Assembly: GCA_965240325.2 (NCBI GenBank)
Contig: OZ251242.1
Coordinates: forward strand, 186,001-250,000
Direction of reading: 5' to 3'
From: Rebecca billardiae RCC1528
Taxonomy: Eukaryota > Protista > Haptophyta
Length of the DNA: 64,000 bases
Below the pieces are notes generated by a model. That model saw nothing but the letters and a program-made list of their open reading frames with translations, was not told where the DNA came from and searched no databases. The translations under genes were made by a program, and so were the position numbers. Positions 24,688 through 41,385 of this stretch are shown here, in pieces (position 1 is the first letter of the stretch; every line of letters begins with the position of its first letter).

Positions 24688-24911
24688 AAGGCTGCACCGA
24701 CCTGTGCGGCTCGCTGCTGCGAGTTTCGGCTTATTCAGTTTCGGCCACGGGCCGGTCCGCCAAGCCCGCAAGGCGCCAAGTCGCCAACTACCGCCAAACG
24801 GGCAAACGGCAAACCGCGACGAAATAAACTGCGGGGGCCTGGCGGCCTTGTCCCGGTGGGGCTGGTCGAACACACACGAATTAATAAAATTGTTTAAAGC
24901 TGTGTTCACCA

Positions 24912-24913
<2 letters not shown>

Positions 24914-24955
<42 letters not shown>
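24914..24955. repeat. (TA)n microsatellite
   Basis: Perfect TA run. Confidence 0.95.
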
Positions 24956-24958
<3 letters not shown>

Positions 24959-25358
24959 ACGACGTGGCAGCATCGGACAAGCGTCAGGCTCAGAGTGCAA
25001 CAGAGTACAGACACATAGATAGAATGCGTCCGCGCCTTCCGTCCAGGTCAGACAGTGCGCCACACCCGCAGCCCTGCCCCCCTACGGGAGCGGGGCCGGG
25101 ATGGAGCACCGCCTCGGCCTGGGGCGGCGCGGCGGCGACGGCAGATGCCGCCGCGGCCGAGCGCCTTCCGGAGCACTTGGATTATGAGGGTGAGCGGTCG
25201 TAGTCGATCACGATGTCGCCGCCCGCCGACCTAACGGCGAGCAGCTCCGGCAAGCGGCAGCCGCGGCTGTCGCCCCCGTGCGCCCGCGTGGGCGCCTGGA
25301 TGAGGATGAGGTCGTAGTACGCGTCGCCGCGCGCCGGCCAAGCCGCCAAGCGGCCGCG

Positions 25359-25360
<2 letters not shown>

Positions 25361-25389
<29 letters not shown>
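25361..25389. repeat. (TA)n microsatellite
   Basis: Perfect TA run. Confidence 0.95.
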
Positions 25390-25395
<6 letters not shown>

Positions 25396-25705
25396 CAATA
25401 TTCACGCAATTTAATAAGAGCGAGTCGCGGCTCCGCCGCCTGAGTCCCATTGGTCGGTTGGAGGGGGGATCGAAAAATGAGCACCTGCCAAAGTGAGACA
25501 TATGATCTCAATACCATCAGCGTAGACGAAATACTGGACGGAATCAGAAAGAAAACCAGCCAATGGTCGTCCCGGAAGGCATGATGGCTTAGCCGCAATC
25601 TCGTTAGCATCTCAGCAATGTTCGCTGTGCGTTTTTGTGTCCTTCTCCACCTCCACGAGGCCTGGACGAGATCGCTTGCGGAAGGCTTCGGGTCGAGAGA
25701 ACGCG

Positions 25706-27421: not shown

Positions 27422-30400
27422 TCAAGTGCGCGCAGCCGTCAGCATCTGCGGGCCGCCGCCGCCGCCGCCGCGCCCCGCCGCGCCGTGCGCCTGCTGCGCT
27501 GCCAGCCGCTGCCGGTAGCGCGTCATCTCGACGAGCACGGTCTCGAGCGCCGCGCGCGGCAGCTCAAAGGTGACGCCCAGGTAGAACGGGGCGGTGCCGT
27601 CGGCGCTGAGGCACGGGTGCAGCGTGAGCAGGTTCCAGAAGCCCCGGCCGGCTGCGTGGGGTATTGCATGCGGCACGGCGCGCGCGAGCAGGCACCGTCG
27701 GCGTGTCAGGGCGTGCGCGCATGCACACGCGTGCACGGCCGGCCGGTGTTGCCAGACGCAGCGCATCGCGCGCGGCCAACGGTCGAGTGCGGCGCGGTGG
27801 CGGTCGCGCAGCGCCAGCCACACCTCTGGTCTCGTTGTAGAGGTGGACGCGGCAGCCCTGGCGCGCGCCGATGGAGAGCTTGAGCAGCTGCACGCTGGAC
27901 GGGTCGGTGCACTCGGCCTGCAGGAAGCGGCAGTTGCGCCCCGTGCACTCGGCCGCGCTGAAGCCCGCAAGCTCCTGCGCGCGCAGCGCCGGGCGCGCGC
28001 GGCGGGCGGCTCATGCATGGAGTGAGGAGCAAAGCGATGGCGCGGGGCGCGCAGGAGGGAGCGGCGATGGGCGGCGCGCGAGCCGGGGAGGAAGGCGCGG
28101 GCCGCCACTGCGCCCCACGCGCGCCGCGCGTCGCACCAGGAAGCCCGGGCTCGCGTACACCAGCGGCGTGTCCCGCTGCTCGGTGGCGGAGACGACCACC
28201 CCAAAGCCGCGCGCGCCGAGCACCGTTCGCACGAGAAGCCCGCGGGGGATCTGCGCGGGGCCGTGATCGGCGTCGTCGTCGCTCGCGCCGTCGGAGTCGT
28301 CGGCGTCGTCGCTGCGGGCGGCCGCCGCGGGCGCGTCGGGGGGCGTCGGCTGCGGCTGCGGCGGCGGCAGCGCGATGGCGGCGGCGCGCGCTCGCGCCTC
28401 GAGCGCCGGCGGCAGCGGCCCCATCCGGCGCCCGACGCCCAGCAGCTGAGGCTTGCCGCTGTGCGCGCCGCCGAGCCGAGCGGAGGGCGTGGGTGCGGCG
28501 GCGGCGGCTGCGGCGGGCGCGCGGTGCGTGGGCTCGGCCGGTGTCCCCACCACCGCCAGCCCCGCCGTCACGGCATGCGGCGAGCCGTCCTGCTGCTGCT
28601 GCTTGCCGCCGCCCACGCGCGGCTCAGACCCGCGGGGCGCCGCGCCGCCGCCGCCAAACGCGGGAGTGTTCGGAGTGACGCCCACGCCGAGCGAATCGTG
28701 CGCGCGGTGTGGCGGGGCTGCCGTCGCGGCCGCCGCCGCGGCCTCGGCGGCGTCCGCCTCCGCCGCCTCCGGCGTCAGCCCGAGCTCAAAGTGCGCGACG
28801 GCGAAGAGCCGGCCCGCCTCGAGCGCGCGCTGCAGGTGCGCGACCGCTCGGCAGCGTGCGAGCTGCGCGGCCGCGTGCGCGTCCGCGGCCTCGTCGTCCG
28901 GCGCGGTGGCGACGGCCTCGGCGGCGGCGGCGGCGGCGCGCACCGCGGCGCGGCGCCACGCGGCTCGCAGCTCGTCGTCCGGCTCGACGCGCGAGACGGC
29001 GCACAGGTCGACGAACGCGCGGCCGCACTTGGCGTGCCGGATGATGAGCGCGTGACGCGCGCCGGCCGCGCCGGCCGCGGCCGGCCTGTTTTATTTCTAC
29101 GAGAGCCCAAAGGCGACATTCGCCAAAACGCGGTACAATGGCGGCTTGCCCGCTGGTGCGGGCCCCGGAGCTAGTCCGGAGAAGTGATGGCACGTCATTC
29201 GCGCATTCTCGTGTTGAGGCGCTGCGCTGTGGCGAAGGATGTTGTCAGACATGCTGATTCGCCTTGCCGTGGTGCTTCGCCTTGACACAGGGGTCACTCG
29301 CGGTGCACGGCAGTGTGCACGATGCAGCGGCGGCGAGCGGCGGCAAACCGCTGCAGCTGGAGGCCCTCTGCAAGCTGCAAGCACTCTGCCTTGGCTGCTG
29401 CGTCGCACCCGTGTCAGTTAGCGACCAGTTCACAGCCAGATGGACTGCAATCGCCACCAGCTCTAAACGCTCCGCCGCCACTACCTTGTCGAGCTTGAGA
29501 TGCTTCCGTTCGGCGTGCGCTTGCTTGCAGCTTGCCGCCTGCATTTGAACGTGATCGCGGAAGGTTAGTAGGCCGGATGCTCAGGCCTCCTCGGCGTATA
29601 ATATTACAAGGTGCGTGCCACGCGCACCCATGACGCGCGGAAAGGCGTGCACACGCGTCCTCGCGCATCTTTCAGGCTGCAGTCTTGGCCAAGATGATGA
29701 GAACAAGCCTGCCAGTGCCGCGCAGGCGCGAGCGCGCGGAGAGTTCTGGGATCCGACCCATGGTGTTGGGTGTACCTCGTGTGCGACAACGACGAGGCGG
29801 ACGAGCGCCGCAACTGGATTCGTGCACTCACCGGTCACCGAGGAGTGCACGAATCGCATTCCTTGCGCACGTGGGGGCCGCCATCGGCCGTGAGAGGTAC
29901 ACCCAACGGGGCGTGACACCGATTCCCACTGGCGAGCACGGGTTTGTCGCCGTGACATAGTAAATGGAATCTGGTAGAAATAAAACAGGCCGGCCGCGGC
30001 GGCGGGCGGCCGCGCGCCGACCGCGCCTTCCGCCGCCTCCTCCTCCGGGGGCGGCGGCGGCGGCGCGAGCAGCGCGGCGTCGAGCTCGGCCTCTGCCGCG
30101 GCGGAGGTGAGCGGCCCGCGCAGCAGCCCGAGCCCCGCGCGCGCGGCGCACAGCTCGGACTCGGAGTAGCCGCTCATTCGCTCGAACGCCGGGCTGGCGT
30201 AGAGGACGCGCGCGGGCTGCGCGGGCGCGCACGACGCGTCGAGGAGGGTGAAGCCGTCGCCGCACTGCGCGTGGAAGAGGCGGCGCGCGAGCGCGGGGTC
30301 GAGCGGGCCGCACGCGGGCGGCGGCACCGCGTGGAGCGGCCGTGGCGGCGCGCACTCCGCGCCGCCGGGCGCCGCGCCGAGCCTGGTCATCTGCGCGCGC

Positions 30401-31044
30401 AGCGCCGCCTCGTCGAAGAAAGTGTTGTGTCGGACCACGCGCGCGGCGCGCACGCTGTCGATCGAGACGCCGCGCACGTGGACGGGCGCGCCGGTGGGCT
30501 TGAGGGTGAGCGGCGAGCCGTCGTAGTCGAGCGTGTGGTACTCCCCCTCGTGCGTGCCGCGCACCGCCCAGTGCGTCGTCACCGCGCCGCCATCGTCCGA
30601 GACGGCCTGCGAGAGAATCTCGAGCTCGAGATTGCGCGGCAGCGCGCGGCGGAAGCGCAGCACTTGCGCTGCGAACGCCTGTGCGCCCGTCGCGTGCGCC
30701 GCAGCCGCACCCTGCTCGGGAGTCGCAGCGGCGATGCCGCCGCTCCGAGCCGCGGGCGCGAGCGCGAGCGCCGCCGTGGACGCCGAGTCGGCCACCTCCG
30801 CGCCGGGCGCGAAGAACGGCTCGAGCTCGGCCGCGCTCGGCGGCGGCGCCGCGCCGTAGGCGCACGCGTCGCGCGCGCGCACGAGCGCGGCGCTCAGCTC
30901 GGACTCGGTGCGGTTCTCGGCGGTGACGACGAGGCGCACGCCTTCGGCCGCGCCGCCACCGCCACCACCGTCGGCGGCGCCGGGCCACATGCACAGCCGG
31001 AGGAACAGCGGAGGCAGCGCCGCGCGCCACGCGGGCCATGCCGA

Positions 31045-31088
<44 letters not shown>

Positions 31089-32709
31089 GGTCGTCGCCGT
31101 CGGCGGCGGTGGCGGCGGCGGGCGGCACGTGCACGCCGAGCTCGAGCGTGCCGAGCTTGAGCTCGCGCGAGAGCGCATGCGCCTGGCGCCGCCACATGCG
31201 CGAGTGCGCGACGAGCGCGGACGACGCCTCCGCCTTCGCCGCGCGCCGCGCCGCGGCGGCGAACGCCGCGCGCGCGCGCTCGCGCTCAGCCTGAGTGCTG
31301 CCGAGCATCTTGAGCGAGCACAGGTCTCGGCCGGCGAGGCTCGAGTCGACGTCGGTGGTCTCGAAGCCGAGGAGCGCCTCGAGCTCGATCGACGCGCGCG
31401 TCACGATCACCGCCGGCGCCGCGCCCGCCCCCTCCGCCGCCTCCTTCACGAGCGCCTCCAGCCAGAGGCCGTCGCGAGCGGCGGCGGCGGCGGCGGCCCG
31501 CAGCGGCGGCAGGGGCGAGGCCGGCGCGCTGCCGCCGCTGCGGCGCGCGAGGCGGTCGGCGGCCTTGGGCGAGGCGTACGGCTTGAAGCCGCGCTCGAGC
31601 TCGGAGAGCTTGTGCACGTGGCGCTCGGCCAGCCCACCACCGCCGCCGCGCGCGCCGCTCGCCCCCGGGCGCGCCGTCGCCGCGTCGATGGGCGGCGGCG
31701 CGCGCCGCTCCGCGACCGCCGCCCAGTCGAGCTTGTCAAACAGCGGGTGCGCCTTGATCGCCGCGGCGCCGCCGGCCTCGGCGCTGCCGAGCCGCGCGCT
31801 GGGGTCGACGACGAGCAGCGCGCTGATCAGCCCGCGCAGCGGCGCGCACATCCACCACGGCATCTCCACCTCGCACGCCGACACCTTGGCGACCAGCTCC
31901 GGCAGCGACTCCGCTGCAAACGGTCCCTCGCCGGTCGCCAGCTCAAACAGCAGGCAGCCGAGGCCCCACCAGTCGACGCCGAAGGAGTAGGGCTCGCCGC
32001 GCAAGGCCTCGGGCGCCATGTACACGGGCGTGCCGCACGACGTCTGCGTCGTGAGCGCCTCCTCCCGCCGCGCGCGCCCGCCGCCGCCACCGAAGCCGAA
32101 GCCGAAGCCAAAGCCGCGCTCCTGATCCTTCTTCTCTCGCTCGCGCTCCGCCGCGGACGGCGCGATCCGCTTCGCGAGCCCAAAGTCGGTGAGGAGGAGG
32201 TGGCCGTCGACGCCGACCATGACGTTCTCGGCCTTGAGATCGCGGTACACCACGCCCGCCGCGTGCACGTGCTCCAGCGCGAGCACGAGCTCCGCCGCGC
32301 ACGCGCGCACCGTCGGCTCGCCCAGCGTGCCGCCCGGCGCGCGGTGCAGCACTTCGAGAAGGTCGCCGCCGCCTGCAAAGTCGAGCAGCATGTAGAGGTG
32401 GTCGTCGTCCTGGAAGGCGTAGTGCAGCGAGACGACGAAGGGGTGGCGCATCGAGCGGAGCAGCTCGTTCTCGCGGATCGCCTGCGCGATCGACGTCTCG
32501 CCCTTGGTGACGACGTGGTTCTTGTCGATGCACTTCATCGCGTACACGCTCGCGTCCGACCGGTGCCGAACGGCGAAGACGCGGCCAAAGCTGCCCGCGC
32601 CCGCGACGCCGACGATCTCAAAGTCGTCGCGCCGCACCTCCGCCACCGCCGGTGCCGACGCCCCCGCCTCCGCGCCGCGTGCCGCGCCCTGCGTCGTGAA
32701 CGTCCACAT
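27422..32709 (-). CDS. AGC Ser/Thr kinase-PAS-SnoaL-PAS-LOV multidomain protein (candidate blue-light receptor kinase), interrupted by a TIR element at 29083-29991
   Basis: Kinase motifs GAGSFGRV, AMK, YRDLKAEN, DFG, CGTPVYMAPE and an AGC tail; two LOV-like PAS domains; SnoaL motif W..RGTHEGEY..PTG.PV.VRG. Segments 32709-29992, 29078-28137, 27974-27824 and 27651-27422 join in frame (introns 28136-27975 and 27823-27652) to give PLVYASPGFL/ELAGFSAAECTGRNCRFLQ..LYNETR/AGRGFWNLLTLHP..YLGVT. Confidence 0.85.
29083..29991. mobile_element. Non-autonomous TIR DNA transposon (909 bp), copy 1, PIF/Harbinger-Tourist-like ends
   Basis: 18-bp TIR GGCCTGTTTTATTTCTAC/GTAGAAATAAAACAGGCC with 4-bp TSD GGCC; near-identical inverted copy at 40474-41385; removing it restores the host reading frame. 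Confidence 0.93.
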
Positions 32710-33283: not shown

Positions 33284-34430
33284 CACGGCACCCTCCGCCT
33301 CCGGCGGAGGCAAGGGTGGTCAGGGTCGCCGACTCCAGCGGAGGCCGGCGCCGAGCTTCGCTTCCGATTTTTTGCAGCGGCGCGGCGCGCTGGGCCGCCG
33401 CCGCTGTGGCGGGCCGCTCGGGGCGTGCACGGCGTGGGCTCGTGCGGCCGCTGCCGCGCACGCCGAGCGATCCGGCGCGGGCTCGCGGCTTGTCGATGGC
33501 CTCGCGCGCCGCAGCGCGACGCGCGCCTTGCCTAGCTTCGCCTGTCTCGCGCCTTGGCCGCCGTGCACGCGTGCGCCGCCATACCGCAAGCTCGGCATAC
33601 CTCTCAGCCGAGCGTGCACGTGCCTTGCGCGACGCGACGCGGGCATTGCCGCCAGGCGATGTAGCCGTAGTGCGAGCGCGCGCCGTGAAGCCTCGGCGCG
33701 GATCGAGAACAATGAAATGATGCCGCGTACGCGCGTGGACCGTCTGTTCGTTGAGCAGTGCTGAAAGCTGCACGACTGACTCTCTTGCTGGGGCGATCGT
33801 CACGTCGCATCGTCACGCAAGGCTCACACACACGTCATAGTGGCGTTCATCGTTTTGGCTACCACGCTCGACTAGTCTTCACGAGTCGCAGCGTCGCGAT
33901 AGCCCATCGTTCAACGGAGGACCGTGATGTCCATTGGTGGTTGATGCGTCAGCAGTTGTCGACAGCTGACCGAGACGTTGAAGACACTCTCGATCCGCGC
34001 TGAGGCTTCACGGCGCGCGCTCGCACTACGGCTACATCGCCTGGCGGCAATGCCCGCGTCGCGTCGCGCAAGGCACGTGCACGCTCGGCTGAGAGGTATG
34101 CCGAGCTTGCGGTATGGCGGCGCACGCGTGCACGGCGGCCAAGGCGCGAGACAGGCGAAGCTAGGCAAGGCGCGCGTCGCGCTGCGGCGCGCGAGGCCAT
34201 CGACAAGCCGCGAGCCCGCGCCGGATCGCTCGGCGTGCGCGGCAGCGGCCGCACGAGCCCACGCCGTGCACGCCCCGAGCGGCCCGCCACAGCGGCGGCG
34301 GCCCAGCGCGCCGCGCCGCTGCAAAAAATCGGAAGCGAAGCTCCGGCGCCGGCCTCCGCTGGAGTCGGCGACCCTGACCACCCTTGGCGGAGGGTGCCTC
34401 CGCCGGTCGCCGGAGGCGGAGGGTGCCGTG
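33284..34430. repeat. Small TA-flanked palindromic element (cacggcaccctccgcc...ggcggagggtgccgtg) split by foldback element A
   Basis: Inverted ends at 33284-33306 and ~34408-34430, flanked by TA on both sides. Confidence 0.55.
33311..34386. mobile_element. Foldback element A: ~400-bp inverted arms, ~280-bp spacer, 7-bp TSD GCGGAGG
   Basis: Arms 33311-33708 and 33988-34386 are nearly identical; ends CAAGGGTGGTCAGGG..CCCTGACCACCCTTG; TSD at 33304-33310 and 34387-34393. Confidence 0.9.
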
Positions 34431-34455: not shown

Positions 34456-35595
34456 CAAGGGTAGTAAGGGTGAGCAACTCCGCTGGCGACAGCCGCGGAG
34501 GTCGGTCGGGCTCTGTTTGCCTCGGCGCCCGGTGCGAGCGGAGCGGAGCGAGTACTATCAGCGGCGGAGGGCGCTGAGGCCGCGCACGGCGTGAGGCGCG
34601 GCGTCGGCCGAGTCCGTCTGCGGAGGATACGCGGCGCTCGGCCCGCTGCGCAGCAGCAGTGTGCCTCACTTTGCCCCGAGCGCCGTCCTCCGCGTCGCCT
34701 CCTTCCCGCCTTGGAGCAGCACGCATGTGCGCGCCGCCACCTCGAAGGCGGCACGGGCTTGCTCAGACGACCGCGCGCGCGTGGCGCGCGACTCGGTCGA
34801 CTGCGCGCGCGTGCTGCCGCGGTGCAAGGTAGCGCCACCGCATACGCGCGCCGTGGCCTTGCGAGAGCGTGTGCGCGGACGTGAGTGCGAGCTCACACAC
34901 ATGTCTAATGCTGCTTGCGCATCCGACTAGTGCCGAGTGACGTGAAGCTGGAAAAGACAGCGGCGTGAGTGTTTGTACCATCGATGCGGAGCCATAGCGT
35001 CCGCTTGCATTCGTGCCGAGAAGGGATACACACGGCTAGGCCTTCGTCATGGGTATCCAATGTCACTCAACACCTCGCTGATCGACCGACGAGCGCTGGC
35101 GTGAGGCACAGCGAACCATTCGTGAGAGCAAGCAGACAAACGAGCACTACGCTCATGAGATGGCCGTAAGCAAAGGCACGCGCGGGCACGGCGCGCGTAT
35201 GCGGTGGCGCTACCTTGCAACGCGGCAGCGCGCGCGCGCAGTCGACCGAGTCGCGCGCCACGCGCGCGCGGTCGTCTGAGCAAGCCCGTGCCGCCTTCGA
35301 GGTGGCGGCGCGCACATGCGTGCTGCTCCAAGGCGGGAAGGAGGCGACGCGGAGGACGGCGCTCGGGGCAAAGTGAGGCACACTGCTGCTGCGCAGCGGG
35401 CCGAGCGCCGCGTATCCTCCGCAGACGGACTCGGCCGACGCCGCGCCTCACGCCGTGCGCGGCCTCAGCGCCCTCCGCCGCTGATAGTACTCGCTCCGCT
35501 CCGCTCGCACCGGGCGCCGAGGCAAACAGAGCCCGACCGACCTCCGCGTGCTCCGCGGCTGTCGCCAGCGGAGTTGCTCACCCTTACTACCCTTG
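34456..35595. mobile_element. Foldback element B: ~400-bp inverted arms, ~330-bp spacer, 7-bp TSD GCCAGAC
   Basis: Arms 34456-34855 and 35187-35595; ends CAAGGGTAGTAAGGG..CCCTTACTACCCTTG; TSD at 34449-34455 and 35596-35602. Confidence 0.9.
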
Positions 35596-40473: not shown

Positions 40474-41385
40474 GGCCTGTTTTATTTCTACCAGATTCCA
40501 TTTACTATGTCACGGCGACAAACCCGTGCTCGCCAGTGGGAATCGGTGTCACGCTCCGTTGGGTGTACCTCTCACGGCCGATGGCGGCCCCCACGTGCGC
40601 AAGGAATGCGATTCGTGCACTCCTCGGTGACCGGTGAGTGCACGAATCCAGTTGCGGCGCTCGTCCGCCTCGTCGTTGTCGCACACGAGGTACACCCAAC
40701 ACCATGGGTCGGATCCCAGAACTCTCCGCGCGCTCGCGCCTGCGCGGCACTGGCAGGCTTGTTCTCATCATCTTGGCCAAGACTGCAGCCTGAAAGATGC
40801 GCGAGGACGCGTGTGCACGCCTTTCCGCGCGTCATGGGTGCGCGTGGCACGCACCTTGTAATATTATACGCCGAGGAGGCCTGAGCATCCGGCCTACTAA
40901 CCTTCCGCGATCACGTTCAAATGCAGGCAGCAAGCTGCAAGCAAGCGCACGCCGAACGGAAGCATCTCAAGCTCGACAAGGTAGTGGCGGCGGAGCGTTT
41001 AGAGCTGGTGGCGATTGCAGTCCATCTGGCTGTGAACTGGTCGCTAACTGACACGGGTGCGACGCAGCAGCCAAGGCAGAGTGCTTGCAGCTTGCAGAGG
41101 GCCTCCAGCTGCAGCGCCGGTTTGCCGCCGCTCGCCGCCGCTGCATCGTGCACACTGCCGTGCACCGCGAGTGACCCCTGTGTCAAGGCGAAGCACCACG
41201 GCAAGGCGAATCAGCATGTCTGACAACATCCTTCGCCACAGCGCAGCGCCTCAACACGAGAATGCGCGAATGACGTGCCATCACTTCTCCGGACTAGCTC
41301 CGGGGCCCGCACCAGCGGGCAAGCCGCCATTGTACCGCGTTTTGGCGAATGTCGCCTTTGGGCTCTCGTAGAAATAAAACAGGCC
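40474..41385. mobile_element. Non-autonomous TIR DNA transposon (912 bp), copy 2, intergenic, opposite orientation
   Basis: Same 18-bp TIRs, 4-bp TSD GTAC; differs from copy 1 by a few substitutions and a 3-bp indel. Confidence 0.93.

What the first reader, a model, noticed from the sequence alone, without database searches (positions are those of the whole stretch)
27422..32709. Hidden 'inverted phototropin': AGC kinase-PAS-SnoaL-PAS-LOV candidate blue-light receptor
Seen: joining four segments across a transposon and two GT-AG introns gives one ~1346-aa frame. It has an intact AGC kinase at the N-terminus (with an insert between DFG and the T-loop), a degenerate LOV-like PAS, a SnoaL/NTF2-like domain, a second LOV-like PAS without the photoactive motif, and a C-terminal LOV with GRNCRFLQ and both flavin-binding Asn. 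The LOV exon is missed by the ORF track. Established: phototropins are LOV1-LOV2-AGC kinase, aureochromes are bZIP-LOV and helmchromes are RGS-LOV. I do not know a characterised receptor with the kinase first, LOV last and a SnoaL pocket between. Inference: an independently assembled light-regulated kinase that may integrate blue light with small-molecule binding.
Basis: partly seen in the sequence, partly recalled or inferred. Interest (0 to 1): 0.9.

Follow-up and report, generated by a model that had tools for sequence, protein, structure and literature searches.

The report
Kinase-first, LOV-last blue-light receptor candidate
A haptophyte alga carries a gene that joins a protein kinase at the front to a blue-light-sensing LOV domain at the very end, the reverse of plant phototropins and apparently assembled independently; in this copy a transposon must be spliced out for the full protein to be made.

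Summary
On the minus strand, four segments (32709-29987, 29085-28137, 27974-27824, 27651-27422) join into one 1350-aa frame. The order is AGC-type kinase, an unassigned PAS-like region, a SnoaL domain, a cysteine-less LOV-type PAS, a roughly 230-aa low-complexity linker, and a C-terminal LOV with GRNCRFLQ.

It is a real gene family. Pavlova sp. CCMP459 (haptophyte, Pavlovales) has a complete 1193-aa transcript with the same order, assembled three times independently. Two further genomic contigs carry the gene collinearly and share the intron after PGFx.

The kinase falls outside the phototropin kinase clade (AU p 0.011) and has DFG rather than DFD. The LOV sits on its own branch. The fusion is therefore independent of phototropin.

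The window's LOV has all nine hallmark flavin and adduct residues but Thr in place of the active-site Gln, which the relatives keep.

Open points:
- No RNA data were available, so splicing of the 909-bp TIR element (intron 29986-29086) is unproven. If it is not spliced, this copy ends inside the element.
- The first "LOV-like PAS" is only weakly supported.
- Nothing supports small-molecule sensing by the SnoaL domain.
- Light regulation is inferred, not shown.

The scan's earlier unchecked notes report two or three more such genes elsewhere in this genome. I found no published description; one 2026 survey lists "SnoaL + LOV" as uncharacterised.

The parts
29987..32709 (-). Exon 1, with the ATG at 32709-32707: kinase, PAS-like region, SnoaL and the N-terminal half of the LOV-type PAS (residues 1-907 plus two bases of codon 908)
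   Evidence: Open frame. Collinear with P0001.
31720..32628 (-). AGC-type Ser/Thr kinase domain (residues 28-330). Motifs present: GAGSFG, YAMK, YRDLKAEN, DFG, T-loop TSCGTPVYMAPE, DWWGLG.
   Evidence: Pfam Pkinase E 5e-55. Best solved relatives are PKA, RSK1 and S6K1, E 4e-59. Motifs read.
31576..31590 (-). GFKPY (residues 374-378), the counterpart of the conserved LExGFRxF(E/G) in relatives. It resembles an AGC hydrophobic motif (FxxF).
   Evidence: Alignment A2; coordinates.
30910..31473 (-). Conserved region of unknown family (residues about 413-600), possibly a PAS fold with low-complexity inserts
   Evidence: Conserved patches in four relatives. No Pfam, PDB or hhalign match. Low-confidence model with PAS-like strand and helix order; Foldseek top hits are PAS domains, best E 0.014.
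30391..30900 (-). SnoaL / NTF2-like domain (residues about 604-773), the best-conserved part outside the kinase
   Evidence: Pfam SnoaL 45 bits against a cut-off of 28.4, and SnoaL_2. Nearest solved structures are a predicted ester cyclase (8ysb) and IdmH (6hnn). Many invariant columns in A4.
29987..30261 (-). LOV-type PAS without the cysteine motif, N-terminal half. AGLGLLRGPLTS stands in place of GxNCRFLQGxxTD.
   Evidence: Aligned to P0001 residues 760-830. The P0001 domain hits LOV structures at E 2e-8.
29086..29986 (-). Predicted intron 1 (901 nt, GT..AG), lying almost wholly inside the transposon. Removing it leaves 12 extra in-frame bases.
   Evidence: No RNA evidence was available.
29083..29991 (.). 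909-bp non-autonomous TIR element (ends GGCCTGTTTTATTTCTAC), flanked by GGCC duplications at 29079-29082 and 29992-29995
   Evidence: Higher contig depth over the element in a DNA run.
28137..29085 (-). Exon 2: rest of the LOV-type PAS (ALIIRHAK...AAWRR), a low-complexity linker with a conserved KPQLLGV..MG motif (from 28454), an A'alpha-like LLVRTVL stretch (from 28238) and the first LOV strands up to ASPGFL
27975..28136 (-). Intron 2 (162 nt, phase 0, holds an in-frame TGA). Its position after PGFx is shared with the genes in L001, L005 and L006.
27824..27974 (-). Exon 3: LOV core ELAGFSAAECTGRNCRFLQAECTDP...LYNETR, with the adduct cysteine codon at 27932-27930
   Evidence: E 3e-7 to 1n9l on this exon alone.
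27652..27823 (-). Intron 3 (172 nt, phase 1). It is needed to reach the FWNLL frame and is absent from the relatives' genes.
27422..27651 (-). Exon 4: GRGFWNLLTLHPCLSADGTAPFYLGVTFE (Thr 1302 at 27571-27569 in place of the active-site Gln), a conserved C-terminal Jalpha-like helix (27491-27559) and the stop at 27424-27422

Best explanation
The locus encodes a member of a small family of candidate blue-light receptor kinases found in Pavlovales haptophytes.

Shown:
- One reading frame of 1350 aa can be assembled from four exons.
- Its order is an N-terminal AGC-type Ser/Thr kinase with all catalytic motifs, a conserved PAS-like region, a SnoaL/NTF2-like domain, a LOV-derived PAS that has lost the cysteine motif, a long flexible linker, and a C-terminal LOV followed by a conserved helix.
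- The same order exists as one mRNA in Pavlova sp. CCMP459.
- The kinase and the LOV do not descend from phototropin.

Inferred:
- The C-terminal LOV binds FMN and forms the cysteine adduct in blue light.
- This loosens the flanking A'alpha and Jalpha-like helices.
- That change either releases the kinase from inhibition by the C-terminal sensor block, or drives LOV-LOV pairing as in aureochromes so that two kinase heads phosphorylate each other's T-loop.
- The SnoaL and PAS domains act as the scaffold or oligomerisation core.

In this copy a 909-bp transposon sits in a loop of the cysteine-less PAS. The full protein is made only if the element is removed as a 901-nt intron that uses GT and AG inside its own inverted ends.
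For: - Gene model: a single 1350-aa frame with GT..AG introns.
- Domains: Pfam Pkinase and SnoaL.
- Kinase relatives: PKA, RSK and S6K are the nearest solved kinases.
- Relatives: P0001 is collinear over its whole length, with no gaps across either LOV splice junction.
- Taxon: P0001 and P0274 come from Pavlova sp. CCMP459.
- Transcripts: three separate 3.87-kb transcript contigs carry the whole ORF.
- Genomic copies: L005/L006 and L001 hold the gene collinearly with the same intron position.
- LOV fold: the relative's LOV aligns without gaps to Chlamydomonas phototropin LOV1, E 1e-23. The window's own exon 3 hits the same structure.
- LOV residues: the window's LOV has 9 of 9 residues in the published LOV filter (G, N, C, R, F, L, Q, N, N; PMC9098866).
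- Conserved flanking helices around the LOV.
- Independent origin: DFG rather than DFD, and the kinase lies outside the phototropin clade. Forcing them together costs 29.7 lnL, AU p 0.011. The LOV lies outside phototropin LOV1/LOV2.
Against: - No RNA run holds this locus. The one holder is low-coverage DNA.
- The element's donor CT|GTTTTA is unlike this gene's other donors (GTGCGA, GTGTGG). A consensus G|GTGAGT donor inside the element, at 29831, would be out of frame.
- The two element copies are about 99% identical, so the insertion is recent. Intact downstream exons therefore do not prove continued use.
- The active-site Gln is Thr here and the second phosphate-binding Arg is Lys. The window's LOV also has a long branch (1.03 against 0.36 for the relative), which could mean relaxed constraint.
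- The LOV is about 900 residues from the kinase across a poorly conserved linker, so direct allostery is uncertain.
- No photochemistry or kinase assay exists.
Confidence: 0.55

Rival explanations
1. This copy is a recently transposon-disrupted allele or paralogue. The element is not removed cleanly, so the mRNA yields a 1042-aa kinase-PAS-SnoaL protein that ends in transposon-coded residues, or it is degraded. The LOV exons are then silent here, and the full receptor comes only from the other copies in the genome.
For: - The exon-1 frame runs 135 codons into the element and stops at 29581.
- The donor at the element's edge is weak, and a stronger out-of-frame donor lies inside it.
- The element copies are 99% identical, so the insertion is young.
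- The second copy lies in ORF-free DNA, so there is no sign in this window that the element usually lands in exons.
- The window copy is the most divergent member of the family.
- Earlier scan notes report more such genes of about 4.4 kb, the size expected without the element, on other pieces (unchecked).
Against: - GT and AG sit exactly inside the inverted ends, and their use leaves 12 in-frame bases in a loop that already carries a 33-residue insert absent from relatives.
- Among the in-frame donor and acceptor pairs listed, this is the only one that neither adds transposon-coded residues nor removes the conserved ALIIRHAK strand.
- All downstream exons are intact.
Confidence: 0.3
2. The protein is made and the LOV is photoactive, but light does not switch catalysis. 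It controls where the kinase sits or what it binds, as RGS-LOV proteins bind membranes in light or aureochromes dimerise. The kinase itself would be regulated by T-loop phosphorylation like other AGC kinases.
For: - A long disordered linker lies between the sensor and the rest of the protein, and it carries a conserved short motif (KPQLLGV..MG) that looks like a docking site.
- The T-loop Thr and a hydrophobic-motif-like FxxF are kept, as in kinases controlled by upstream kinases.
- Effector-first, LOV-last receptors known from the literature act by association rather than by a rigid lever (PMC4937327, PMC6099885; titles and abstracts).
Against: Nothing in the sequence separates this from direct control of catalysis. 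Dimerisation would itself be expected to change trans-phosphorylation.
Confidence: 0.2
3. The C-terminal domain of this copy no longer works as a light sensor. It would be a flavin or redox sensor, or an inert PAS, because the signalling Gln is lost.
For: - Thr replaces the active-site Gln and Lys replaces one phosphate-binding Arg, while all three relatives keep Gln.
- The window's LOV has a long branch.
Against: - All nine hallmark residues, including the adduct Cys, are kept.
- Natural LOV receptors without the Gln, some with Ser or Thr, exist. Tested ones still signal, if more weakly (PMC9098866).
Confidence: 0.1
4. The kinase part and the LOV part are two neighbouring genes, and joining them is an artefact of reading long stop-free stretches in very GC-rich DNA.
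For: In DNA of about 80% GC, stop-free frames of 300 codons occur on both strands and in several frames. There is no RNA evidence for this locus.
Against: - The Pavlova transcript is one complete ORF covering both parts, assembled independently three times.
- The window's linker aligns to it, including conserved motifs.
- The cysteine-less PAS is itself split between the two parts by the transposon, so neither part is a whole gene alone.
Confidence: 0.04

Closest known systems
Phototropins (LOV1-LOV2-AGC kinase; plants and green algae)
   Same: A flavin-type LOV with GxNCRFLQ joined to an AGC-group Ser/Thr kinase in one polypeptide, with a helix after the LOV core. The likely output is light-dependent phosphorylation.
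   Different: - The order is reversed: kinase first, LOV last.
- There is one photoactive-type LOV rather than two.
- SnoaL and two PAS-type domains lie between the kinase and the LOV.
- The kinase has DFG rather than DFD and lies outside the phototropin kinase clade (AU p 0.011).
- The LOV lies outside the LOV1/LOV2 clade.
- The LOV is about 900 residues from the kinase instead of directly upstream.
Aureochromes (bZIP-LOV; stramenopiles)
   Same: The effector is N-terminal and the LOV C-terminal, with flanking A'alpha and Jalpha helices. This is the best model for how a terminal LOV can act, namely by light-driven pairing.
   Different: The effector is a DNA-binding bZIP rather than a kinase. 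Aureochromes are much shorter, have no SnoaL or extra PAS domains, and belong to a different algal phylum.
Glutamine-deficient LOV receptors (Dietler et al. 2022, PMC9098866)
   Same: The window's LOV meets their filter, with 9 of 9 conserved residues present and the active-site Gln absent. Thr is among the natural replacements they list.
   Different: Their tested examples are bacterial and engineered receptors. The relatives of this protein keep the Gln, so the loss is specific to this copy.
'SnoaL (PF07366) + LOV' transcripts in ocean metatranscriptomes (PMC13737086, 2026)
   Same: The same pair of domains, listed there as a previously uncharacterised combination seen once or a few times. 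These may be fragments of this family.
   Different: That survey mentions no kinase and gives no full architecture, taxon or gene model. The link to this family is my inference and was not checked, because its supplementary data are not held.
CaMKII (kinase - regulatory segment - linker - NTF2-fold hub)
   Same: An N-terminal Ser/Thr kinase tethered by a linker to an NTF2-superfamily domain. This suggests the SnoaL domain could be an assembly hub rather than a ligand pocket. The comparison comes from my own knowledge of CaMKII, not from a tool result.
   Different: No sequence match to the CaMKII association domain appeared in the Pfam scan at E up to 10. CaMKII is a CAMK-group kinase and has no PAS or LOV domains.
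Introners (transposons that create spliceosomal introns; PMC12130899, PMC9860276)
   Same: A short non-autonomous element with inverted ends and a target duplication, present in several copies. It sits in a coding exon with GT and AG at its ends, and its removal keeps the frame.
   Different: Splicing is not shown here. The only other copy in the window is not in a gene. The donor is weak. I found no report of introners in Pavlovales.

Membership tests
LOV photosensor domain | GxNCRFLQ motif with the adduct-forming cysteine | tested here: met
   GRNCRFLQ is in exon 3, with the Cys codon at 27932-27930. Relatives have GHNCRFLQ.
LOV photosensor domain | Nine conserved residues of the published filter (YtvA G59, N61, C62, R63, F64, L65, Q66, N94, N104) | tested here: met
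   9 of 9 by alignment: G-x-N-C-R-F-L-Q, the N of LYNETR and the N of FWNLL. The filter is as quoted.
LOV photosensor domain | Active-site glutamine on the last strand (GVQ) | tested here: not met
   The window has GVTFE (Thr 1302). P0001, L001, L005 and L006 have GVQ. This places it in the glutamine-deficient subset (PMC9098866).
LOV photosensor domain | Full-length PAS core alignable to solved LOV structures | tested here: met
   The P0001 LOV aligns to 1n9l without gaps over 103 residues, E 1e-23. The window aligns to P0001 without gaps across both splice junctions.
LOV photosensor domain | Binds FMN and shows the blue-light photocycle | not testable with these tools
   This needs expression and spectroscopy.
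Phototropin | Domain order LOV1-LOV2-kinase | tested here: not met
   The kinase is at residues 28-330 and the LOV at about 1195-1305.
Phototropin | AGC VIII-type kinase (DFD in place of DFG; membership of the phototropin kinase clade) | tested here: not met
   The window and P0001 have LTDFGL, while all 12 LOV-first kinases have DFD. The trees separate the two groups, and AU p is 0.011 against one clade.
AGC protein kinases | Complete catalytic motifs and the AGC-type T-loop TxCGTPxYxAPE | tested here: met
   GAGSFG, YAMK, YRDLKAEN, DFG, TSCGTPVYMAPE and DWWGLG are all present. The nearest solved kinases are PKA, RSK1 and S6K1.
AGC protein kinases | C-terminal tail with a hydrophobic motif FxxF(S/T/E)(F/Y) | tested here: inconclusive
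   A conserved LExGFRxF(E/G) lies about 45 residues after the domain in relatives; the window has GFKPY. Pfam Pkinase_C was not detected.
SnoaL-like / NTF2-like superfamily | Match to the family profile above the curated threshold | tested here: met
   PF07366 scores 45.0 bits (cut-off 28.4) and PF12680 27.3 bits (cut-off 27) on residues 620-790. The same holds in P0001 and P0123.
SnoaL-like / NTF2-like superfamily | A ligand or catalytic pocket in use | not tested
   No confident model could be built, because the relatives are too few for a deep alignment.
PAS fold (region between kinase and SnoaL) | Recognisable PAS sequence profile or fold | tested here: inconclusive
   Against:
- No Pfam hit at E up to 10.
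- No PDB sequence hit.
- hhalign probability 0.1 against a 55-sequence LOV profile.

Weakly for:
- AlphaFold models were poor (pLDDT 34 and 49), but the strand and helix order is PAS-like.
- Foldseek's top 19 hits are all PAS or LOV structures, best E 0.014.
- Language-model neighbours are PAS clusters at 0.84-0.86, below the tool's 0.9 line.
Introner (intron-generating transposon) | Inverted ends, target duplication and several copies | tested here: met
   18-nt inverted ends. The target duplication is GGCC here and GTAC at the second copy. Contig depth over the element is higher in a DNA run.
Introner (intron-generating transposon) | Removed from mRNA by the spliceosome | not testable with these tools
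   No RNA run was listed for this locus, and the only holder is DNA.

The most novel reading that the evidence does not exclude
Pavlovales haptophytes independently evolved a blue-light-switched AGC kinase that works on a different plan from phototropin. A SnoaL/NTF2 and PAS core would assemble the protein into dimers or larger oligomers, as the NTF2-fold hub does in CaMKII. A tethered C-terminal LOV-Jalpha would then use light to gate contact between kinase heads. This would be a natural light-controlled kinase holoenzyme and a new scaffold for optogenetic kinases. In this copy the gene would also carry a working transposon-made intron.
Probability: 0.2. Interest if true: 0.8.

Novelty: new variant of a known kind. 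Interest (0 to 1): 0.62.

Why it matters
Only a few natural designs couple a LOV sensor to an eukaryotic Ser/Thr kinase, and phototropin is the one that has been studied. This would be a second, independently built design with the opposite polarity. Comparing the two would show which features of light-to-kinase signalling are necessary and which are historical accident.

It would give haptophytes, a major group of ocean phytoplankton, a candidate blue-light kinase pathway. It would also offer a new template for light-controlled kinases. The Pavlova protein, which lacks the low-complexity inserts, is the better one to express.

The transposon in the coding loop is a ready test of whether such elements create introns in this lineage.

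Tried and rejected
- RNA evidence: no RNA run was listed. The 'any' search gave one sample of three runs, and only X1 held the stretch (17% of words). Its contigs are genomic, since one crosses the intron 3 acceptor unspliced, and coverage of unique parts is near zero. It says nothing about splicing.
- Same-species transcripts or more relatives in JGI metagenome contigs: 600 pattern matches, none confirmed.
- Exact look-up of the 1042-aa ORF in public assemblies: not on record, so the organism could not be named directly. Pavlovales is inferred from the nearest relative, from about 71% GC and from literature on Diacronema (73% GC, 43.5 Mb; PMC8379373).
- Full-length relatives: two word-index searches and one exhaustive HMMER search found only the Pavlova cluster and fragments (P0123, P0280, and the P0165 kinase-fragment cluster). 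The other top hits are phototropins, double-kinase proteins or giant multi-LOV proteins.
- First PAS: Pfam, PDB sequence search and hhalign were all negative, and two AlphaFold runs on 4-5-sequence alignments were of low confidence.
- Alternative splice pairs around the transposon: 22 in-frame GT-AG pairs exist. All others either add transposon-coded residues or remove the conserved ALIIRHAK strand.
- Second element copy as support for intron behaviour: rejected, because no ORF crosses it.
- The Glantz 2016 LOV catalogue could not be read, as it is not held.
- An early guess that the genome was a pelagophyte (Aureococcus or Pelagomonas) was dropped once the nearest relative proved to be a Pavlova.

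Full report
**What is in the sequence**

The window is very GC-rich, about 60-84% per kb. The feature lies on the minus strand.

A 1042-aa ORF (32709-29581) starts with a protein kinase. Reading the three minus-strand frames downstream shows the pieces of a LOV domain in two frames:
- ...GFGVVVSATEQRDTPLVYASPGFL
- ELAGFSAAECTGRNCRFLQAECTDP...LYNETR
- GRGFWNLLTLHPCLSADGTAPFYLGVTFE...

Joining 32709-29987, 29085-28137, 27974-27824 and 27651-27422 gives 4053 nt and 1350 aa with one terminal stop. The three introns (901, 162 and 172 nt) all begin with GT and end with AG.

**The transposon**

The first intron lies almost wholly inside a 909-bp element (29083-29991). The element has 18-nt inverted ends (GGCCTGTTTTATTTCTAC) and a GGCC target duplication. 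A second copy, about 99% identical and in the opposite orientation, lies at 40474-41385 with a GTAC duplication.

Because the ends read ..CT|GTTTTA and TAAAACAG|G.., either orientation offers GT and AG. Using them removes 901 nt and leaves 12 in-frame bases.

I listed all in-frame GT-AG pairs nearby. The other 21 either add transposon-coded residues or delete a conserved strand.

Against clean splicing:
- The donor is unlike this gene's other donors.
- A consensus G|GTGAGT inside the element, at 29831, would shift the frame.
- The second copy lies in ORF-free DNA.

If the element is not removed, the frame runs 135 codons into it and stops at 29581.

**Is it one gene?**

No RNA run holds the locus. 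The one holder found is low-coverage DNA. The answer therefore comes from relatives.

The best database match to exon 1 is P0001 (E 2e-134), a complete 1193-aa ORF from a transcriptome. Pfam finds in it Pkinase 16-263, SnoaL 583-716, PAS 760-837 and PAS_9/LOV 1071-1155. It ends ...GHNCRFLQ...FWNLL...GVQ....

Its cluster includes the EukProt entry for Pavlova sp. CCMP459, a haptophyte of the order Pavlovales. Three separate 3.87-kb contigs from three JGI samples each carry the whole ORF with short UTRs.

My spliced model is collinear with P0001 from the kinase to the last helix, with no gaps at either LOV splice junction. ASPGFL|ELAGF aligns with NPGFEDLTEY, and NETR|AGRGFWNLL aligns with NVTRKGRTFWNLL.

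Two more genomic contigs of 70-74% GC (L005/L006 and L001) hold the same gene collinearly. Both have an intron at exactly the position of the window's intron 2, after PGFx.

The family is rare. An exhaustive HMMER search of 1.8 billion representatives and two word-index searches found only these sequences and fragments of them.

**Domains**

*Kinase.* All catalytic motifs are present, along with the AGC-type T-loop TSCGTPVYMAPE. PKA, RSK1 and S6K1 are the nearest solved kinases, at E 4e-59.

About 45 residues after the domain, the relatives share LExGFRxF(E/G), which resembles an AGC hydrophobic motif. The window has GFKPY there.

The insert between DFG and the T-loop is 47 residues here and 20-21 in relatives. 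The extra part is a low-complexity run peculiar to this copy and is not the phototropin-type insert.

*SnoaL.* It scores above Pfam's threshold in the window and in the relatives. It is the most conserved non-kinase part. Its first helix is the ALVRxR..AY segment that I first counted with the preceding region.

*Second PAS.* In P0001 its nearest solved structures are LOV domains, at E 2e-8, and it aligns from the first to the last strand. The motif is AGL(R/G)(I/L)L(G/R)G..TS, so there is no cysteine and no flavin-binding set.

*Linker.* It is poorly conserved except for an AAEAVA helix, a G(R/K)(L/M)F.VAH patch and a P.L(L/M)GV...MG motif.

It is conserved in patches but has no Pfam, PDB or profile match.

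Two AlphaFold runs were of low confidence, with pLDDT 34 and 49. The better model has a PAS-like order of strands and helices, and Foldseek's top hits are nearly all PAS or LOV structures, with a best E of only 0.014. Language-model neighbours are PAS clusters below the tool's reliability line.

I call this region PAS-like but unproven, with no evidence that it is specifically LOV-like.

**The C-terminal LOV**

The relative's LOV aligns without gaps to Chlamydomonas phototropin LOV1, at E 1e-23. The window's 50-aa exon 3 alone hits the same structure at E 3e-7.

The window has all nine residues used as a published LOV filter (PMC9098866). These are G, N, C, R, F, L and Q of the motif, plus the two Asn.

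Two changes stand out:
- The active-site Gln on the last strand is Thr (GVTFE). All three relatives keep GVQ.
- The Arg that pairs with the flavin phosphate in LOV1 is Lys, both in the window and in P0001.

According to PMC9098866, about 350 natural LOV receptors lack this Gln, some with Ser or Thr in its place. Tested ones still signal, often more weakly.

After the core comes a conserved helix (PRAALETVLVEMTRYRQRL, matching ELAAVMVEVNRWQNEI in P0001). Before it comes a conserved LL(V/L)RT stretch. These sit where the Jalpha and A'alpha helices lie in other LOV receptors.

**Independent origin**

In a tree of 201 kinase domains, the window and P0001 are sisters (97). They sit with LOV-less AGC kinases. 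The 12 LOV-first kinases, all with DFD, form their own clade (100).

In a 64-sequence IQ-TREE analysis, forcing the two groups together costs 29.7 log-likelihood units, with AU p 0.011.

In a tree of 54 LOV domains, the window and P0001 form a long separate branch (99). This branch lies outside the phototropin LOV1/LOV2 clade (96) and outside the arrays of the giant multi-LOV proteins. Aureochrome LOVs were not in that sample.

**How it probably works**

This part is inferred. Blue light would form the flavin-cysteine adduct in the terminal LOV and loosen its flanking helices.

Because the LOV is terminal and tethered by a long flexible linker, I favour one of two routes:
- Light-driven LOV pairing, as in aureochromes, that brings two kinase heads together for T-loop trans-phosphorylation.
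- Release of an inhibitory contact between the sensor block and the kinase.

The SnoaL domain is as likely to be an assembly core as a ligand pocket. NTF2-fold domains oligomerise, and CaMKII pairs a kinase with such a hub; that comparison comes from my own knowledge. Nothing here supports small-molecule sensing.

**Literature**

Coesel et al. [quoted passage not shown] Their LOV-plus-Pkinase references are chlorophyte phototropin homologues.

A 2026 survey lists 'SnoaL (PF07366) + LOV' among previously uncharacterised combinations seen once or a few times, and mentions no kinase (PMC13737086). It is the only paper in the library that holds both terms.

A 2025 preprint lists a 'LOV-NTF2' protein in another alga without detail.

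I found no description of a kinase-first, LOV-last receptor.

**Earlier notes from this scan**

These notes are unchecked. They report two or three further genes with the same order on other contigs of this genome, each about 4.4 kb, which is the size expected without the element. They also report another transposon that might splice in frame. If true, this locus is one paralogue of a small family, and its own integrity matters less for the biology.

**Verdict**

The architecture and the family are real and independent of phototropin. Photoactivity is likely from sequence. Regulation of the kinase by light, and production of the full protein from this transposon-bearing copy, remain to be shown.

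Noticed in passing
window 33311-33708 and 33988-34386: A perfect inverted repeat of about 399 nt (100% complementary, 279 nt between the arms) lies roughly 600 nt upstream of the gene's start codon. A second pair at 34742-34863 / 35179-35300 is 96% complementary.
   Followed up: no
window 40474-41385: A second copy of the 909-bp TIR element, in the opposite orientation, about 99% identical and with a GTAC target duplication. It lies in a lower-GC stretch with no ORF across it.
   Followed up: partly
window 29581-29988 (minus strand): The element carries a stop-free run of 135 codons in the frame of exon 1. An unspliced mRNA would therefore give a 1042-aa protein with a transposon-coded tail rather than stopping at once.
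   Followed up: partly
window 24900-25400: Several (TA)n microsatellites appear as YIYIYI stretches in the mechanical ORF list.
   Followed up: no
P0121 (4197 aa), P0122 (3055 aa), P0133 (1611 aa): Giant proteins with 6-10 or more LOV domains each were among the best hits to the relative's LOV. Earlier scan notes describe LOV/RGS arrays fused to K+ channels in this same genome.
   Followed up: no
L005 1488-2612: In the related genomic contig, a PfkB-family kinase gene lies just upstream of the kinase-SnoaL-LOV gene on the opposite strand. I did not look for such a neighbour near the window's copy.
   Followed up: no
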